From NCBI RefSeq assembly GCF_006345805.1, contig NW_021832033.1, positions 1-33,500 on the forward strand: DNA of 33,500 bases, in the 5' to 3' direction. Shown here piece after piece: positions 24,811-33,206 of the stretch (position 1 is the first letter of the stretch; every line of letters starts with the position of its first letter). Position numbers and translations under genes: made by a program. This stretch comes from Octopus sinensis. Its lineage: Eukaryota. The notes below the pieces were generated by a model that saw only the letters and a program-made list of their open reading frames with translations, did not search any database and was not told the DNA's origin.

Positions 24811-25038
24811 GGTACTTGTCTATTGTCGTGGTCCCGGTTTTGCACACGCGAATTCGCGCGCGCGCGCGCGCCAGACGTAGGTGATCGATACTCGAGATCC
24901 TACGAGGTGACTTGCGCATGCGCAGTGCGCGATTCGCGCATGCGCGTTAAACCCCCCCCCCGGAAAAAAAAAGGATTTTTTTTAAAGATACCTTTCTGCT
25001 TTTTAAGACAAGAAGGTGTTCGATTTCACTAAAAAAAA

Positions 25039-25083
<45 letters not shown>

Positions 25084-25572
25084 ACATTCAATTTTACACA
25101 AAAAAATTACATAGTCGCTTTCCTCGCGGATTTACAGATAAATGAATTAATTACTATTTTACAGAATAAAATTAATGAATTAATTATATAAATTAAATAA
25201 TTCTTGAAAATTAATTATTATTAATACTCGAGATCCTACGAGGTGACATGCGCATGCGCAGTGCGCGATTCGCGCATGCGAGTTAACCCCCCCCCCCCCC
25301 CCGGGAAAAAAAAAAAGGATTTTTTTAAAGATACCTTTAGTCGCTTTCCTCGCGGATTTACAGATAAATGAATTAATTACTATTTTACAGGATAAAATTA
25401 ATGAATTAATTATATAAATTAAATAATTCTTGAAAATTAATTATTATTAATAATATTTTTTGAACAAAGTAAAAAGTAATTACTTTTTTTTTACAGAAAC
25501 GCGAACGGGGAATTTTCAGTTTAAAGTTTATAAATAAATACATTTCATGTGTAATGTAAAATAGTAGTCAAT
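24811..25572 (+). repeat. Left terminal module of the long inverted repeat (~760 bp)
   Basis: GC-rich tip with (CG)8, a (GT)n tract and two internally duplicated sub-blocks: ATACTCGAGATCCTACGAGGTGAC...AAAGATACCTT and AGTCGCTTTCCTCGCGGATTTACAGATA...ATTATTAATA. Mirrored at 32469-33206. Confidence 0.9.
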
Positions 25573-27175
25573 TAATTAAATACCTTCTTTTTCTGGGGTA
25601 TTATTCTTGTTCAAACTCGTCACATATTTGTAACTTTTCGATGTAAACCTTTCAATGTAAGTCTTAAAAAGTTGCGGCAGCTTAGCAGAATGTCACGTTA
25701 TATTTCTACTATGCAATGGTTTCAATACACGCGGAGATCATACCCCTTCAAACTTTATACCATTCTGAAAGATGTTCAGAATATTCATCACACGACCGTT
25801 TTCATTTTGTCAAATATTTTTTTCCACAGAAACTCATCAAAATGTGGCGATTTTATGACAGTGTAGCAAATTAGTAATCAAAACTAATTAAATACCTTCT
25901 TTTTCTGGGGTATTATTCTTGTTCAAACTCGTCACATATTTGTAACTTTTCGATATAAACCTTTCAATGTAAGTCTTAAAAAGTGCGGGCAGCTTAGCAG
26001 AAATGTCACGTTATAATTTCTACTATGCAATTGTTTTCAATACACGCGGGAGATCATACCCCTTCAAACTTTATACCATTCTGAAAGATGTTTCAGAATA
26101 TTCATCACACGACCGTTTTCATTTTGTCCAAATATTTTTTTCCACAGAAACTCATCAAAATTGTGGCGATTTTATGACAGTGTAGCAAATTAGTAATCAA
26201 CCTTCTTTTTCTGGGGTATTATTCATACCCCTTCAAACTTTATACCATTCTGAAAGATGTTTCAGAATATTCATCACACGACCGTTTTCATTTTGTGACA
26301 GATTTTATGACAGTGTAGCAAATTAGTAATCAACCTTCTTTTTCTGGGGTATTATTCATACCCCTTCAAACTTTATACCATTCTGAAAGATGTTTCAGAA
26401 TATTCATCACACGACCGTTTTCATTTTGTCCAAATATTTTTTTCCACAGAAACTCATCAAAATTGTGGCGATTTTATGACAGTGTAGCAAATTAGTAATC
26501 AACCTTCTTTTTCTGGGGTATTATTCTTGTTCAAACTCGTCACATATTTGTAACTTTTCGATGTAAACCTTTCAATGTAAGTCTTAAAAAGTTGCGGCAG
26601 CTTAGCAGAAATGTCACGTTATAATTTCTACTATGCAATGGTTTCAATCCACGCGGGAGATCATACCCCTTCAAACTTTATACCATTCTGAAAGATGTTT
26701 CAGAATATTCATCACACGACCGTTTTCATTTTGTCCAAATATTTTTTTTCACAGAAACTCATCAAAATTGTGGCGATTTTATGACAGTGTAGCAAATTAG
26801 TAATCAACTAATTAAATACCTTCTTTTTCTGGGGTATTATTCTTGTTCAAACTCGTCACATATTTGTAACTTTTCGATGTAAACCTTTCAATGTAAGTCT
26901 TAAAAAGTTGCGGCAGCTTAGCAGAAATGTCACGTTATAATTTCTACCATGCAATGGTTTCTATACACGCGGGAGATCATACCCCTTCAAACTTTATATC
27001 ATTCTGAAAGATGTTTCAGAATATTCATCACACGACCGTTTTCATTTTGTCCAAAAATACATTCGGGAGATCATACCCCTTCGAACTCTATACCATTCTG
27101 AAAGATGTTTCAGAATATTCATCAAGCAATCGTGTGCAGTTTGCCCATATTGTTCCTTCCACAGAAACTCATCAA
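25573..27175 (-). repeat. Left-arm tandem array of the ~316-bp unit (three full units, two internally deleted, one truncated, plus the transposase 3' end)
   Basis: Recurring CCTTCTTTTTCTGGGGTATTATTC ... CATACCCCTTCAAACTTTATACCATTCTGAAAGATGTTTCAGAATATTCATCAC, in reverse orientation to the right-arm array. Confidence 0.9.
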
Positions 27176-27965
27176 GGTACGAGTCCACCATGGTGGAATG
27201 TACCCCCATCATCGTTTTAAATTTTCTTTTGGCATTCTTCCAGTAACATTCCACAGAATTTGTGTGTACACCTGTTAGCGGATCCACAAAATTCTGGGAA
27301 TGGTTTACTGTGAAATGGATGTATTTTGGTGTCACATCCATTTCTGCAATACCATTATAGGCGGGCCAGCAATCCGAATGAATTGTTGCGCCCGGTCTAA
27401 TAAATTTTTTGATGATGGGTAGCAGAGTTTCCGAGGAACGGTCAGCTACGAACAGTATGAAGCCTTTTTTGTCTTCTCTGTCGTAACCTCCAAAGACCCA
27501 TCTCTCTTGTGGCGTTCTCCCTCTATTGTATTTTCTCTTACACATCAGACTTTCATCTACTTCAACAACGTGTCCGACACCACCAATTTGGTATGGATTG
27601 TTGATTAGATTGTTGCTACAGATATCTCGCATGTATTGATACCATTGAATAACGCTAGATTTTGACAATCCAGTCATTGCTATTGCTCCTGTTATTGTTA
27701 GGTTACTGCCCCAACAATATATAACATGAATGAAATCGTGCAGTTTCAATCTGCTATTTTCGAGATACGATTTCTTTCTAATCGACTCTTTTTCCCCTTT
27801 GTGAGTTGGGCAGCGAAAAATTTTTTCCTGGTTGTGTTTTATAAGAGTCATCTCTCTATGGCATTTTGAGCAAATTGGAGTTGAGGAACTCAACACTTTT
27901 TTGTCCTTTAGGAATGAATAGATACTGTCAAAGTCTTTTACGATACTTTCTATCTCATACAACAT
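27042..27965 (-). CDS. Merlin/IS1595-family DDE transposase, 307 aa, uninterrupted
   Basis: ATG in an A-rich context. N-terminal Zn-ribbon C32-x2-C35...C52-x2-H55, an HTH-like segment, then VEVDES (D137), WVFGG, IHSDCW (D198), VNHSQNFVDPLTGVHTNSVE (E239) and YLDEFLWK. These are the motifs of DDE_Tnp_IS1595/ISXO2-like transposases. Confidence 0.95.
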   Translation of the reverse strand: MLYEIESIVKDFDSIYSFLKDKKVLSSSTPICSKCHREMTLIKHNQEKIFRCPTHKGEKESIRKKSYLENSRLKLHDFIHVIYCWGSNLTITGAIAMTGLSKSSVIQWYQYMRDICSNNLINNPYQIGGVGHVVEVDESLMCKRKYNRGRTPQERWVFGGYDREDKKGFILFVADRSSETLLPIIKKFIRPGATIHSDCWPAYNGIAEMDVTPKYIHFTVNHSQNFVDPLTGVHTNSVECYWKNAKRKFKTMMGVHSTMVDSYLDEFLWKEQYGQTAHDCLMNILKHLSEWYRVRRGMISRMYFWTK

Positions 27966-31700: not shown

Positions 31701-32468
31701 AATTATAACGTGACATTTCTGCTAAGCTGCCGCAACTTTTTAAGACTTACATTGAAAGGTTTACATCGAAAAGTTACAAATATGTGACGAGTTTGAACAA
31801 GAATAATACCCCAGAAAAAGAAGGTATTTAATTAGTTGATTACTAATTTGCTACACTGTCATAAAATCGCCACAATTTTGATGAGTTTCTGTGGAAAAAA
31901 ATATTGGACAAAATGAAAACGGTCGTGTGATGAATATTCTGAAACATCTTTCAGAATGATATAAAGTTTGAAGGGGTATGATCTCCCGCGTGTATTGAAA
32001 CCATTGCATGGTAGAAATTAAACGTGACATTTCTGCTAAGCTGCTGCCGCAACTTTTTAAGACTTACATTGAAAGGTTTACAATCGAAAAGTTACAAATA
32101 TGTGACGAGTTTGAACAAGAATAATACCCCAGAAAAAGAAGGTATTTAATTAGTTGATTACTAATTTGCTACACTGTCATAAAATCGCCACAATTTTGAT
32201 GAGTTTCTGTGGAAAAAAATATTTGGACAAAATGAAAACGGTCGTGTGATGAATATTCTGAAACATCTTTCAGAATGGTATAAAGTTTGAAGGGGTATGA
32301 TCTCCCGCGTGTATTGAAACCATTGCATAGTAGAAATTATAACGTGACATTTCTGCTAAGCTGCCGCAACTTTTTAAGACTTACATTGAAAGGTTTACAT
32401 CGAAAAGTTACAAATATGTGACGAGTTTGAACAAGAATAATACCCCAGAAAAAGAAGGTATTTAATTA
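28722..32468 (+). repeat. Right-arm tandem array, ~12 units of 314-319 bp
   Basis: The T of GAA-TG(G/A)TATAAAG recurs at 28801, 29117, 29433, 29747, 30061, 30379, 30694, 31010, 31326, 31642, 31957 and 32276. Units are near-identical. Confidence 0.95.
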
Positions 32469-32949
32469 ATTGACTACTATTTTACATTACACATAAAATG
32501 TATTTATTTATAAACTTTAAACTGAAAATTCCCCGTTCGCGTTTCTGTAAAAAAAAGTAATTACTTTTTACTTTGTTCAAAAATATTATTAATAATAATT
32601 AATTTTCAAGAATTATTTAATTTAAATATATTAATTCATTAATTTTATTCTGTAAAATAGTAATTAATTCATTTATCTGTAAATCCGCGAGGAAAGCGAC
32701 TAAAGGTATCTTTAAAAAAAATCCTTTTTTTTTTCCGGGGGGCGGGTTTAACCGCATGCGCGAATCGCGCACTGCGCATGCGCAAGTCACCTCGTAGGAT
32801 CTCGAGTATTAATAATAATTAATTTTCAAGAATTATTTAATTTATATAATTAATTCATTAATTTTATTCTGTAAAATAGTAATTAATTCATTTATCTGTA
32901 AATCCGCGAGGAAAGCGACTATGTAATTTTTTTGTGTAAAATTGAATGT

Positions 32950-33000
<51 letters not shown>

Positions 33001-33206
33001 TATTTTTAGTGAAATCCAACACCTTTTTGTCTTAAAAAGCAGAAAGGTATCTTTAAAAAAAATCCTTTTTTTTTCCGGGGGAGGGGGGGTTTAACGCGCA
33101 TGCGCAGGTCACCTCGTAGGATCTCGAGTATCGATTACCTACGTCTGGCGTGCGCGCGCGCGAATTCGCGTGTGCAAAACCGGGACCACGACAATAGACA
33201 AGTACC
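32469..33206 (-). repeat. Right terminal module of the long inverted repeat (~740 bp)
   Basis: Reverse complement of 24811-25572 with the same sub-blocks and an (AC)n tract. The outer GC block lacks one GCGCATGCGC-containing segment present on the left. Confidence 0.9.

What the first reader, a model, noticed from the sequence alone, without database searches (positions are those of the whole stretch)
24811..33206. Foldback-type Merlin element: kilobase inverted arms around a 1.55-kb core
Seen: the inverted symmetry runs from each terminus to the same inner boundary, TTGATGAG (27175 on the left, 28722 on the right). This gives arms of ~2.4 kb and ~4.5 kb around a 1546-bp unique core. The left arm overlaps the last 134 bp of the transposase ORF. 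Each arm has a GC-rich tip, duplicated sub-modules, a microsatellite and a tandem array. Established: this modular long-arm design characterises foldback elements such as Drosophila FB and Galileo (P superfamily), whereas typical Merlin TIRs are far shorter. Inference: a foldback-like lineage within Merlin. The intact ORF and near-identical ends suggest recent activity.
Basis: partly seen in the sequence, partly recalled or inferred. Interest (0 to 1): 0.85.

Follow-up and report, generated by a model that had tools for sequence, protein, structure and literature searches.

The report
Octopus Merlin transposon with kilobase arms
This is a real, apparently young copy of an octopus "Merlin" jumping gene whose inverted ends have grown to 2.4 and 4.5 kb by copying and amplifying the tail of its own transposase gene, which is unusual in size but is the same kind of architecture already recorded for some other Merlin and foldback-like transposons.

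Summary
Window 24811-33206 carries inverted arms of 2365 and 4485 bp. They meet the same inner boundary (TTGATGAG at 27175 and 28722) around a 1546-bp core. The core holds an intact 307-aa IS1595/Merlin DDE transposase.

New findings:
- **Origin of the array.** The 316-bp array unit (about 5 copies left, 11.9 right) is a pseudo-copy of the last ~40 codons of the transposase gene plus its 3' flank.
- **Family trait.** A second copy in Octopus sinensis (L001, 4.3 kb) has the same boundaries, ~1.4-kb arms with about 2 units each, and a 9-bp target-site duplication (TSD). Long arms are therefore a family trait and array number varies.
- **Recent insertion.** Three related octopus loci have an empty site exactly at 24810/24811.
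- **Not a clean insertion.** This copy has no TSD, and its arms are only 96% alike. The inserted block continues past 33206 through a 159-bp spacer into another copy (33366 onward) and off the window. It is recombinant, composite or mis-assembled.

Repbase zebrafish Merlins already have ~1-kb TIRs with symmetric arrays, and Galileo grows its TIRs the same way. Verdict: a new member of a known kind. Interest is moderate (0.4).

The parts
24802..24810 (.). Target 9-mer GCATTCATA immediately left of the insertion. Three homologous octopus loci read ...GCATTCATA|AATAAAATTGACC... without interruption (empty site).
24811..24837 (+). Left terminus T1: the 27-bp GGTACTTGTCTATTGTCGTGGTCCCGG, invariant in all five termini seen. 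It starts with the Merlin 5'-GG. It is the presumed transposase binding and cleavage site (inferred).
24811..24960 (+). GC-rich tip of the left arm (62% GC). It contains a (CG)n run and GCGCATGCGC palindromes.
24888..25452 (+). Duplicated sub-terminal modules: A1 24888-24995, (TG)15.5 25046-25076, B1 25112-25226, A2 25224-25338, B2 25338-25452.
25558..26765 (-). Left 316-bp array, units L5-L2 (283, 318, 302 and 305 bp). Unit L3 is rearranged by a 133-bp sub-duplication and is 71-75% identical to the other units.
26766..27175 (-). Innermost left unit L1 (410 bp). It holds the genuine 3' end of the transposase CDS (codons 264-307) followed by a 94-bp partial duplicate and the 3' flank. L001 has the same 412-bp structure.
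27042..27965 (-). Transposase ORF, 307 aa. It has a CxxC...CxxH zinc finger (C32, C35, C52, H55), a DDE_Tnp_IS1595 domain and the triad D137/D198/E239. The C-terminus is conserved, with a 13-aa stop-loss extension (TGA to CGA).
27176..28721 (-). Unique core (1546 bp): transposase codons 1-263 plus 756 bp upstream. It is 99.35% identical to the core of L001.
28722..32483 (+). Right 316-bp array: 11 full units and one 288-bp unit, differing from each other at 0-14 positions. Each unit starts with a pseudo-copy of the transposase 3' end (DEFLWKKIFGQNENGRVMNILKHLSEWYKV*), in inverted orientation relative to the gene.
32484..33206 (-). Outer right arm: modules B2', A2', B1', (AC)18.5 at 32957-32993, A1' with a 19-bp deletion, and the GC-rich tip. 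Terminus T2 is at 33180-33206.
33207..33365 (.). 159-bp unique non-element spacer between T2 and T3. It is absent from the empty sites of the homologous loci.
33366..33500 (+). Terminus T3: the first 135 bp of another copy of the same family (94.8% identical to T1). It has the same orientation as T1 and runs off the window.

Best explanation
Window 24811-33206 is one copy of an octopus-specific family of Merlin (IS1595-like DDE) cut-and-paste DNA transposons whose terminal inverted repeats have become kilobases long.

**How the family is built and moves**
- The single-exon 307-aa transposase has an N-terminal zinc finger and the catalytic triad D137/D198/E239.
- It is inferred to bind the invariant 27-bp GG-terminus, excise the element and reinsert it with a 9-bp target duplication.
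- The 9-bp duplication is shown in copy L001 and in a sister family (L003).

**How the arms grew (two steps, read from the sequence)**
1. A 316-bp segment was duplicated in tandem. It starts at codon 264 of the transposase gene and runs ~200 bp past its stop.
2. The same segment was also copied in inverted orientation to the far side of the core. The TIR therefore now begins inside the coding sequence.

**What happened after that**
- Unequal exchange or replication slippage changes the unit number independently in each arm. L001 has about 2 units per arm. This copy has about 5 on the left and 11.9 on the right.
- The arms are non-coding. They carry no extra copies of the terminal site.

**This particular copy**
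- It has the best-preserved ORF of the two copies seen.
- It is not a clean single insertion. It lies at the left edge of a lineage-specific inserted block that continues through a 159-bp spacer into a second copy.
- It lacks its own TSD.
- Most likely it arose by recombination or aberrant (two-copy) transposition between family members. Which of these applies is not resolved.
For: **Merlin membership**
- Pfam PF12762 at 1e-20.
- 426 homologues, the best being O. sinensis LOC115210589 at 99%.
- Conserved CxxC/CxxH zinc finger and DDE columns, and a conserved C-terminus.

**Arms, boundaries and arrays**
-.

**The unit is a pseudo 3' end of the CDS**
- The alignment of units with the real CDS shows a 19-nt anchor identical to the real CDS in most units (0-1 mismatch), a diverged middle, and a ~69-nt stretch ~93% identical. 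The stop falls at the position where homologues stop.

**Family trait with variable arrays**
- L001 (O. sinensis CM016862.1) spans 7899-12199. Its core is 1547 bp and its arms are 1345 and 1409 bp, with 1.9 units. It carries the 9-bp repeat GAATTTCTA.

**Sister family**
- L003 (61% aa identity) has ~360-bp TIRs, a clean 9-bp TSD TTCGATGTT and the same GGTACT-N11-GTGGTCCC terminus.

**Recent insertion**
- L005, L006 and L007 align at 94-96% up to window 24810, then continue with an uninterrupted empty site.
- The cores of the two copies are 99.35% identical.

**Not a clean insertion**
- No shared 6-9-mer at the two flanks.
- The right-hand continuation of the empty site is absent from the window.
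- A third terminus lies at 33366.
- winL-winR identity is 96.0%, against 98.8% for the two arms of the TSD-flanked L001.

**Precedent**
- Galileo lengthens its TIRs by internal tandem repeats and by recruiting adjacent internal sequence. It also forms chimeric copies without matching TSDs (PMC3573991).
Against: - Only two full copies and one extra terminus could be examined. No genome-wide census was possible.
- No reads were available. The 3.8-kb array of 96-100% identical units is exactly where an assembler can mis-join or mis-count.
- The TSD of L001 is offset by 4 bp (GACC) on the right side.
- Transposase binding to the 27-bp terminus, and activity of this ORF with its 13-aa stop-loss extension, are inferred and not shown.
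- L005-L007 may be paralogous segments rather than orthologues. 'Empty site' therefore dates the insertion only relative to that ~4-6% divergence.
- The order of the two arm-growth steps cannot be determined.
Confidence: 0.75

Rival explanations
1. Assembly artefact at this copy. The long right arm, or the join between the core and the T2 end, is a mis-assembly inside the near-identical 316-bp array. The T2 / 159-bp / T3 stretch really belongs to another locus. The true element here would be smaller and would end with a TSD elsewhere.
For: - No TSD.
- The inserted block does not close within the window.
- Array units differ at only 0-14 positions, and R2 equals R7.
- The right outer arm is the most divergent of the four arms compared.
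Against: - The right arm is complete and colinear down to a perfect 27-bp terminus.
- There are no Ns in the window.
- An independent copy has the same inverted design and inner boundaries, so the architecture itself is not an artefact.
- Real chimeric, TSD-less copies are common for long-TIR elements (PMC3573991).
Confidence: 0.15
2. Composite (two-copy) transposition. Two neighbouring copies and the 159 bp of donor DNA between them were moved as one unit. The outermost ends were used (T1 and the far end of the second copy). This resembles composite bacterial transposons and FB-flanked giant transposons in Drosophila.
For: - The left edge of the inserted block is exactly a Merlin terminus.
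- The block contains T2, a unique 159-bp spacer absent from three empty sites, and T3 in the same orientation as T1.
- There is no TSD at T1/T2.
Against: - The right junction lies outside the window, so the predicted terminus followed by GCATTCATA and then AATAAAATTGACC is unseen.
- An adjacent deletion, or ectopic recombination between copies, explains the same facts.
Confidence: 0.2
3. Two independent short-TIR insertions, nested or head-to-head. On this view there is no long-arm family and the symmetry is accidental juxtaposition.
For: The absence of a TSD at this copy, and clustering with a further copy 159 bp away.
Against: - L001 at an unrelated locus repeats the same inner boundaries (1547-bp core) and has ~1.4-kb arms and a 9-bp flanking repeat.
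- Both arms of the window copy end at the same codon-264 anchor.
Confidence: 0.03
4. A member of the classical Foldback (Mutator-related) or Galileo (P) families rather than Merlin.
For: Only the architecture: long, internally repetitive, unequal arms.
Against: The encoded protein is an IS1595/Merlin DDE transposase. The termini start with GG and the TSD is 9 bp, as in Merlin (PMC8101967).
Confidence: 0.01

Closest known systems
Repbase zebrafish Merlins: Merlin-1_DR, Merlin-N5_DR and Merlin-2_DR (as tabulated in PMC8101967, S1 Table)
   Same: They belong to the same superfamily. TIRs are listed as ~1000 bp for Merlin-1_DR and Merlin-N5_DR. Tandem arrays sit symmetrically in both ends: 113 bp x5.2 in each arm of N5_DR, and 79 bp x12.5 and x9.7 in Merlin-2_DR.
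   Different: - The arms here are longer (1.35-4.5 kb).
- The unit is larger (316 bp) and demonstrably derived from the transposase's own 3' coding end, so the TIR overlaps the ORF.
- The host is a cephalopod.
- I could not read the Repbase sequences, so their unit origin and exact TIR lengths were not compared.
Galileo (P superfamily, Drosophila)
   Same: - It is a foldback-like transposon with an identifiable transposase.
- Its TIRs lengthen by internal tandem repeats (~210 bp) and by recruiting adjacent internal sequence into the opposite arm.
- The two arms vary independently.
- Chimeric copies without matching TSDs arise by ectopic recombination (PMC3573991).
   Different: - It has a different transposase (P/THAP against IS1595 DDE).
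- Its TSD is 7 bp against 9 bp here.
- Galileo TIRs reach ~1.25 kb, and its longest-TIR copies are non-autonomous. Here the copy with the longest arms keeps an open transposase ORF.
- Galileo repeats carry secondary transposase binding sites. Here no terminal-site k-mer recurs in the arms.
Drosophila FB, Tetris and Meloidogyne Tm1 (foldback elements, mostly Mutator-related)
   Same: They have long arms made largely of tandem repeats, variable between copies. Tetris's ~220-bp TIR repeats seeded satellite arrays (PMC4079207). Foldback structure is thought to evolve independently in different TE lineages.
   Different: They belong to a different superfamily, and most copies lack a transposase. 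No free-standing satellite of the 316-bp unit was seen in the sequence available here.
Typical Merlin elements (Feschotte 2004, as summarised in PMC8101967) and the sister family in L003
   Same: They share 5'-GG termini, 8-9-bp TSDs and a single ~300-aa DDE_Tnp_IS1595 transposase. L003 also shares the terminus motif GGTACT-N11-GTGGTCCC and the 9-bp TSD.
   Different: The reported TIR range is 24-462 bp, and L003 has ~360 bp. This family has at least 1.35 kb.

Membership tests
Merlin superfamily (eukaryotic IS1595-like DNA transposons) | Transposase with a DDE_Tnp_IS1595 catalytic domain | tested here: met
   PF12762 at E=1e-20, 74.7 bits against a cutoff of 27. Residues 143-271 cover profile positions 25-152 of 153.
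Merlin superfamily (eukaryotic IS1595-like DNA transposons) | Conserved D-D-E catalytic triad | tested here: met
   In the alignment of 12 homologues, D137 is invariant, D198 is conserved in most sequences and E239 is nearly invariant.
Merlin superfamily (eukaryotic IS1595-like DNA transposons) | TIRs beginning with 5'-GG | tested here: met
   All five termini begin GGTACTTGTC.... The criterion is taken from PMC8101967.
Merlin superfamily (eukaryotic IS1595-like DNA transposons) | 8- or 9-bp target-site duplication | tested here: inconclusive
   - Window copy: none.
- L001: 9-bp GAATTTCTA on both sides, but offset by 4 bp on the right.
- Sister family L003: a clean 9-bp TTCGATGTT.
Merlin superfamily (eukaryotic IS1595-like DNA transposons) | TIR length within the described range (24-462 bp; up to ~1000 bp in Repbase entries) | tested here: not met
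   The arms are 2365 and 4485 bp here and 1345 and 1409 bp in L001. TIR length is not regarded as a classifying feature (PMC3573991), so this does not exclude membership.
Foldback-like architecture (descriptive class, not a phylogenetic family) | Very long inverted arms that are internally repetitive (tandem units), unequal between arms and variable between copies | tested here: met
   The element has about 5 and 11.9 units in its two arms, against about 2 per arm in L001.
Foldback-like architecture (descriptive class, not a phylogenetic family) | Small or absent middle domain; most copies lack coding capacity | tested here: inconclusive
   Both copies seen keep a 1.55-kb core with a transposase gene. 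It is open in the window and frameshifted in L001. No census of non-autonomous copies was possible.
FB / Mutator-related foldback elements | Mutator-type transposase or homology to FB sequences | tested here: not met
   The only protein domain found is IS1595/Merlin. The other ORF in the element (28437-28853, 138 aa) has no Pfam hit.
Galileo / P superfamily | P-type transposase with a THAP domain; 7-bp TSD | tested here: not met
   The transposase is IS1595-like. The TSD in L001 and L003 is 9 bp.

The most novel reading that the evidence does not exclude
The most novel reading has two parts.

1. The locus is a composite 'macro-transposon'. Two long-armed Merlin copies moved as one unit, carrying 159 bp of donor DNA between them.
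2. The arms are more than passive baggage. About 12 inverted pseudo-copies of the transposase 3' end lie upstream of the gene. Any read-through transcript would therefore fold into a kilobase hairpin RNA that targets the element's own transposase. This would be a built-in self-silencing trigger, analogous to the maize Mu killer inverted duplication (that comparison rests on my own knowledge).
Probability: 0.12. Interest if true: 0.65.

Novelty: new member of a known kind. Interest (0 to 1): 0.4.

Why it matters
- **Range of Merlin TIRs.** It extends the documented length from hundreds of bp (up to ~1 kb in Repbase entries) to 1.4-4.5 kb.
- **Independent origin of foldback-like structure.** It is a clear case in a further DNA-transposon superfamily where the autonomous partner is still visible. 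This supports the idea that foldback structure arises convergently by TIR elongation (PMC4079207, PMC3573991).
- **Origin of the repeat.** Because the unit is traceable to the transposase's own 3' end, the family gives an unusually readable record of how TIRs grow inward.
- **Practical points.** An open ORF, empty homologous sites and 99.35% core identity make it a candidate for a recently active transposon in octopus genomes. Such arrays are also likely trouble spots for assembly and for ectopic recombination.
- **Limit.** None of this overturns current views. It is a well-documented addition, not a new principle.

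Tried and rejected
- **Exact look-up of the window's transposase in public assemblies:** not on record. The window's own assembly could not be reached, and the sequence right of 33500 could not be read.
- **Scan of metagenome contigs for the 27-bp terminus:** 0 hits.
- **A 632-bp dimer higher-order repeat in the right array:** suggested by rounded identities and rejected on exact counts. 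Units differ at 0-14 positions without an alternating pattern, and only R2 equals R7.
- **Array units as extra transposase-binding sites copied from the terminus:** no 9-12-mer of the terminal 30 bp recurs in the arms.
- **TSD search at T1/T2, T3/T2 and in reverse-complement combinations that would indicate an inversion exchange:** no shared word of 7 bp or more at the ends.
- **The 159-bp spacer against the window and all loci:** unique.
- **Do sister families also have long arms?**
  - L003 has ~360-bp TIRs.
  - L002 shows only a right terminus and confusing dispersed repeats.
  - L004 was not resolved.
  - How far the long-arm state extends as a 'lineage' therefore remains open.
- **Rfam on the whole window:** nothing.
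- **Pfam on the second ORF in the element (28437-28853) and on the four neighbouring ORFs:** nothing.
- **FB or Galileo membership:** rejected on transposase identity.

Full report
**1. Source.**
The window is cephalopod DNA. The transposase's best hit is Octopus sinensis LOC115210589 at 99% identity. About 10 kb of sequence left of the element aligns at 94-96% to two O. vulgaris loci and one O. sinensis scaffold. Neither the window's transposase nor its neighbouring ORF is itself in the protein collection. The exact assembly therefore could not be identified, and the sequence could not be extended.

**2. Observation check.**
[quoted passage not shown] Further in, they consist of cross-matching 316-bp units.
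- The anchor TTGATGAGTTTCTGTGG marks the inner boundary on both sides, at 27175 on the - strand and 28722 on the + strand. It then recurs every ~316 bp.
- The core (27176-28721, 1546 bp) is unique within the element.
- TRF gives 11.9 units at 97% on the right and 4.8 units at 84% on the left.
- The GC-rich tips (62% and 55% GC), the duplicated A/B sub-modules and the (TG)n/(AC)n microsatellites are all confirmed.
- The ORF 27042-27965(-) is 307 aa, and its last 134 bp lie in the left arm.

**3. The protein.**
- It matches Pfam DDE_Tnp_IS1595 at 1e-20 and has 426 homologues.
- In an alignment with 11 homologues, the zinc-finger residues C32, C35 and C52 are invariant columns. H55 completes the CxxC...CxxH motif in this protein.
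- Of the catalytic residues, D137 is invariant, D198 is conserved in most sequences and E239 is nearly invariant.
- The N-terminus coincides with those of the homologues.
- The C-terminal stretch encoded inside the arm (EQYGQTAHDCLMNILKHLSEWY) is the conserved Merlin C-terminus. The arm therefore overlaps genuine coding sequence.
- Compared with the second copy, the window ORF has a TGA to CGA change at the ancestral stop, which adds 13 residues. The second copy has a 2-bp deletion just after the anchor, which frameshifts its last 37 codons.

**4. What the 316-bp unit is.**
I aligned all units with the innermost left unit. Each unit has four parts:
- a 19-nt stretch identical, apart from single mismatches in a few units, to codons 264-270 of the gene;
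- a diverged 32-nt stretch;
- a ~69-nt stretch ~93% identical to the following codons;
- about 200 bp of 3' flank.

A unit translates as DEFLWKKIFGQNENGRVMNILKHLSEWYKV*, stopping where homologues stop. The array is thus an amplified pseudo-copy of the gene's 3' end plus downstream sequence.

The innermost left unit is 410 bp. It holds the real coding end and then a 94-bp partial duplicate. L001 has the same 412-bp structure, so this feature is ancestral to both copies. On the right arm the pseudo-ends are inverted relative to the gene.

**5. A second copy shows the arms are a family trait.**
L001 (O. sinensis CM016862.1) carries a 4.3-kb copy at 7899-12199.
- It has the same anchors, and its core is 1547 bp.
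- Its arms are 1345 and 1409 bp, with only about 2 units each.
- It is flanked by GAATTTCTA on both sides. The right copy is displaced by 4 bp, GACC.
- Its core is 99.35% identical to the window's core. The shared 270 codons differ by 3 synonymous and 4 non-synonymous changes, which fits neutral decay after recent transposition.

Genomic copies do not have only short TIRs.

**6. Sister families.**
- L003 encodes a transposase 61% identical to this one. It is a 3.9-kb element with ~360-bp TIRs and a clean 9-bp TSD, TTCGATGTT. Its terminus is GGTACTCCTTAACAACAGTGGTCCC, which shares the frame GGTACT-N11-GTGGTCCC with this family.
- The same motif ends elements in L002 and L004.
- Kilobase arms are therefore a derived state within a group of octopus-type Merlins that share a terminal motif.

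**7. Insertion site and the problem with this copy.**
- L005 and L007 (O. vulgaris OX597841.1, at 8.7 and 16.3 Mb) and L006 (O. sinensis scaffold VCDQ01005947.1) align to the window up to base 24810.
- All three then continue with AATAAAATTGACCTGTATATGG...; L005 and L006 read ...AAGAAGCATTCATA immediately before it, and in L007 the left flank is diverged at this point (...AACCTTTTATA). This is an empty site exactly at T1.
- That continuation is nowhere in the window.
- The two ends of the 24811-33206 unit share no flanking word of 7 bp or more.
- To the right of T2 there is a unique 159-bp spacer, and then at 33366 the left terminus of another copy, which runs off the window.
- The outer arms of the window copy are 96.0% identical, no closer than either is to L001's arms (95.3-97.0%). 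L001's own two arms are 98.8% identical.

Taken together, the 8.4-kb unit is structurally a complete element. However, the insertion at this site is larger than the unit, and the unit is probably recombinant. Four readings fit the data:
- composite transposition of two copies with the DNA between them;
- an adjacent deletion or aberrant transposition from the T2 end;
- ectopic recombination between copies;
- a mis-join inside the array by the assembler.

TSD-less chimeric copies are well documented for Galileo (PMC3573991). The tools here cannot decide between these readings.

**8. Mechanism.**
Shown:
- the family identity;
- an open ORF with catalytic residues;
- invariant 27-bp GG termini;
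- 9-bp duplications in relatives;
- empty homologous sites;
- variable array number.

Inferred:
- the transposase binds the 27-bp terminus and moves the element by cut-and-paste;
- the arms grew by tandem duplication of the [codon 264 to 3' flank] segment together with its inverted transfer to the other arm (gap repair or template switching), and then by unequal exchange in each arm separately;
- the arms have no coding role, and no terminal-site k-mer recurs in them.

Speculative: read-through transcripts would form long hairpins that include antisense copies of the transposase 3' end.

**9. Comparison with the known.**
- The Merlin literature gives TIRs of 24-462 bp, 5'-GG termini and 8-9-bp TSDs (PMC8101967).
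- That paper's S1 Table lists Repbase Merlin-1_DR and Merlin-N5_DR with ~1000-bp TIRs and symmetric arrays. It lists Merlin-2_DR with symmetric 79-bp arrays of 12.5 and 9.7 copies. It also notes that tandem repeats occur inside several Merlin families.
- Galileo shows the same two routes of TIR growth. [quoted passage not shown]
- Foldback structure is thought to evolve independently in several TE lineages (PMC4079207).
- Among molluscs, Merlin is largely a cephalopod feature (PMC10294476).
- A search for papers combining 'Merlin' and 'foldback' found no description of such an element.

**10. Verdict.**
It is a Merlin with foldback-like arms, and the family was recently active. It is not a new kind of element, and this copy is not a clean insertion.
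- Novelty: a new member of a known kind. The notable details are the arm-length record for Merlin, the TIR overlapping the ORF, and a repeat unit derived from the transposase's own 3' end.
- Interest: 0.4.

Noticed in passing
window 33366-33500 (+): Start of another copy of the same Merlin family (94.8% identical to T1 over 135 bp). It lies only 159 bp beyond the right end of the reported element, has the same orientation, and runs off the window.
   Followed up: partly
window 17931-22562 (+): Four consecutive + strand ORFs (470, 242, 205 and 259 aa) with no Pfam domain. The first is 96% identical to an O. vulgaris hypothetical protein (P0121, 634 aa). The gene family is octopus-specific and multi-copy on one chromosome in both O. 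vulgaris and O. sinensis. In the window it is split, either by frameshifts or by introns.
   Followed up: partly
window ~14800-24810 vs L005, L006, L007: About 10 kb of the window, genes and intergenic DNA alike, is present in at least three further copies at 94-96% identity (two on O. vulgaris OX597841.1, 7.6 Mb apart, and one O. sinensis scaffold). This indicates a segmental duplication family, or a mix of orthologues and paralogues.
   Followed up: partly
window 24004-24449 and 24507-24666: A 440-bp degenerate trinucleotide array (TCA/GTC, about 127 repeats) that produces long spurious ORFs, followed by a 72-bp duplication (2.2 copies, 97%). Both lie just upstream of the insertion site, and the site itself sits in a loosely periodic ~85-bp repeat.
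   Followed up: no
window 4793-4953, 9635-9816, 12404-12558, 13050-13330, 14048-14272: Copies of a ~170-280-bp dispersed repeat (76-88% identical). It is also present in the flanks of L001, L005, L006 and L007 and is probably a SINE or MITE family.
   Followed up: no
L003 9488-13399: A 3.9-kb Merlin of a sister family (transposase 61% identical) in an ENA assembly of unknown organism. It has ~360-bp TIRs at 96-98% identity, a clean 9-bp TSD TTCGATGTT, and a block of short inverted GGAATACCCAAC-type repeats at 12591-13026.
   Followed up: partly
L001/window, L002 11691-11715, L003, L004 5992-6016: The terminal motif GGTACT-N11-GTGGTCCC is shared by Merlin elements whose transposases are only 58-61% identical (those in L002 and L003). 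This suggests a conserved transposase recognition frame across octopus-type Merlin families.
   Followed up: partly
L004 1292-1753 and 7195-7742: A ~460-bp inverted repeat pair at 99-100% identity in O. vulgaris. It flanks a 6.4-kb segment that contains an unannotated 278-aa gene and one GGTACT-N11-GTGGTCCC motif. It may be another long-TIR element.
   Followed up: no
window 2737-3166: A long (TA)/(TATATA)-type microsatellite. It cross-matches similar tracts in L007 and generates spurious ORFs of 135-140 aa.
   Followed up: no
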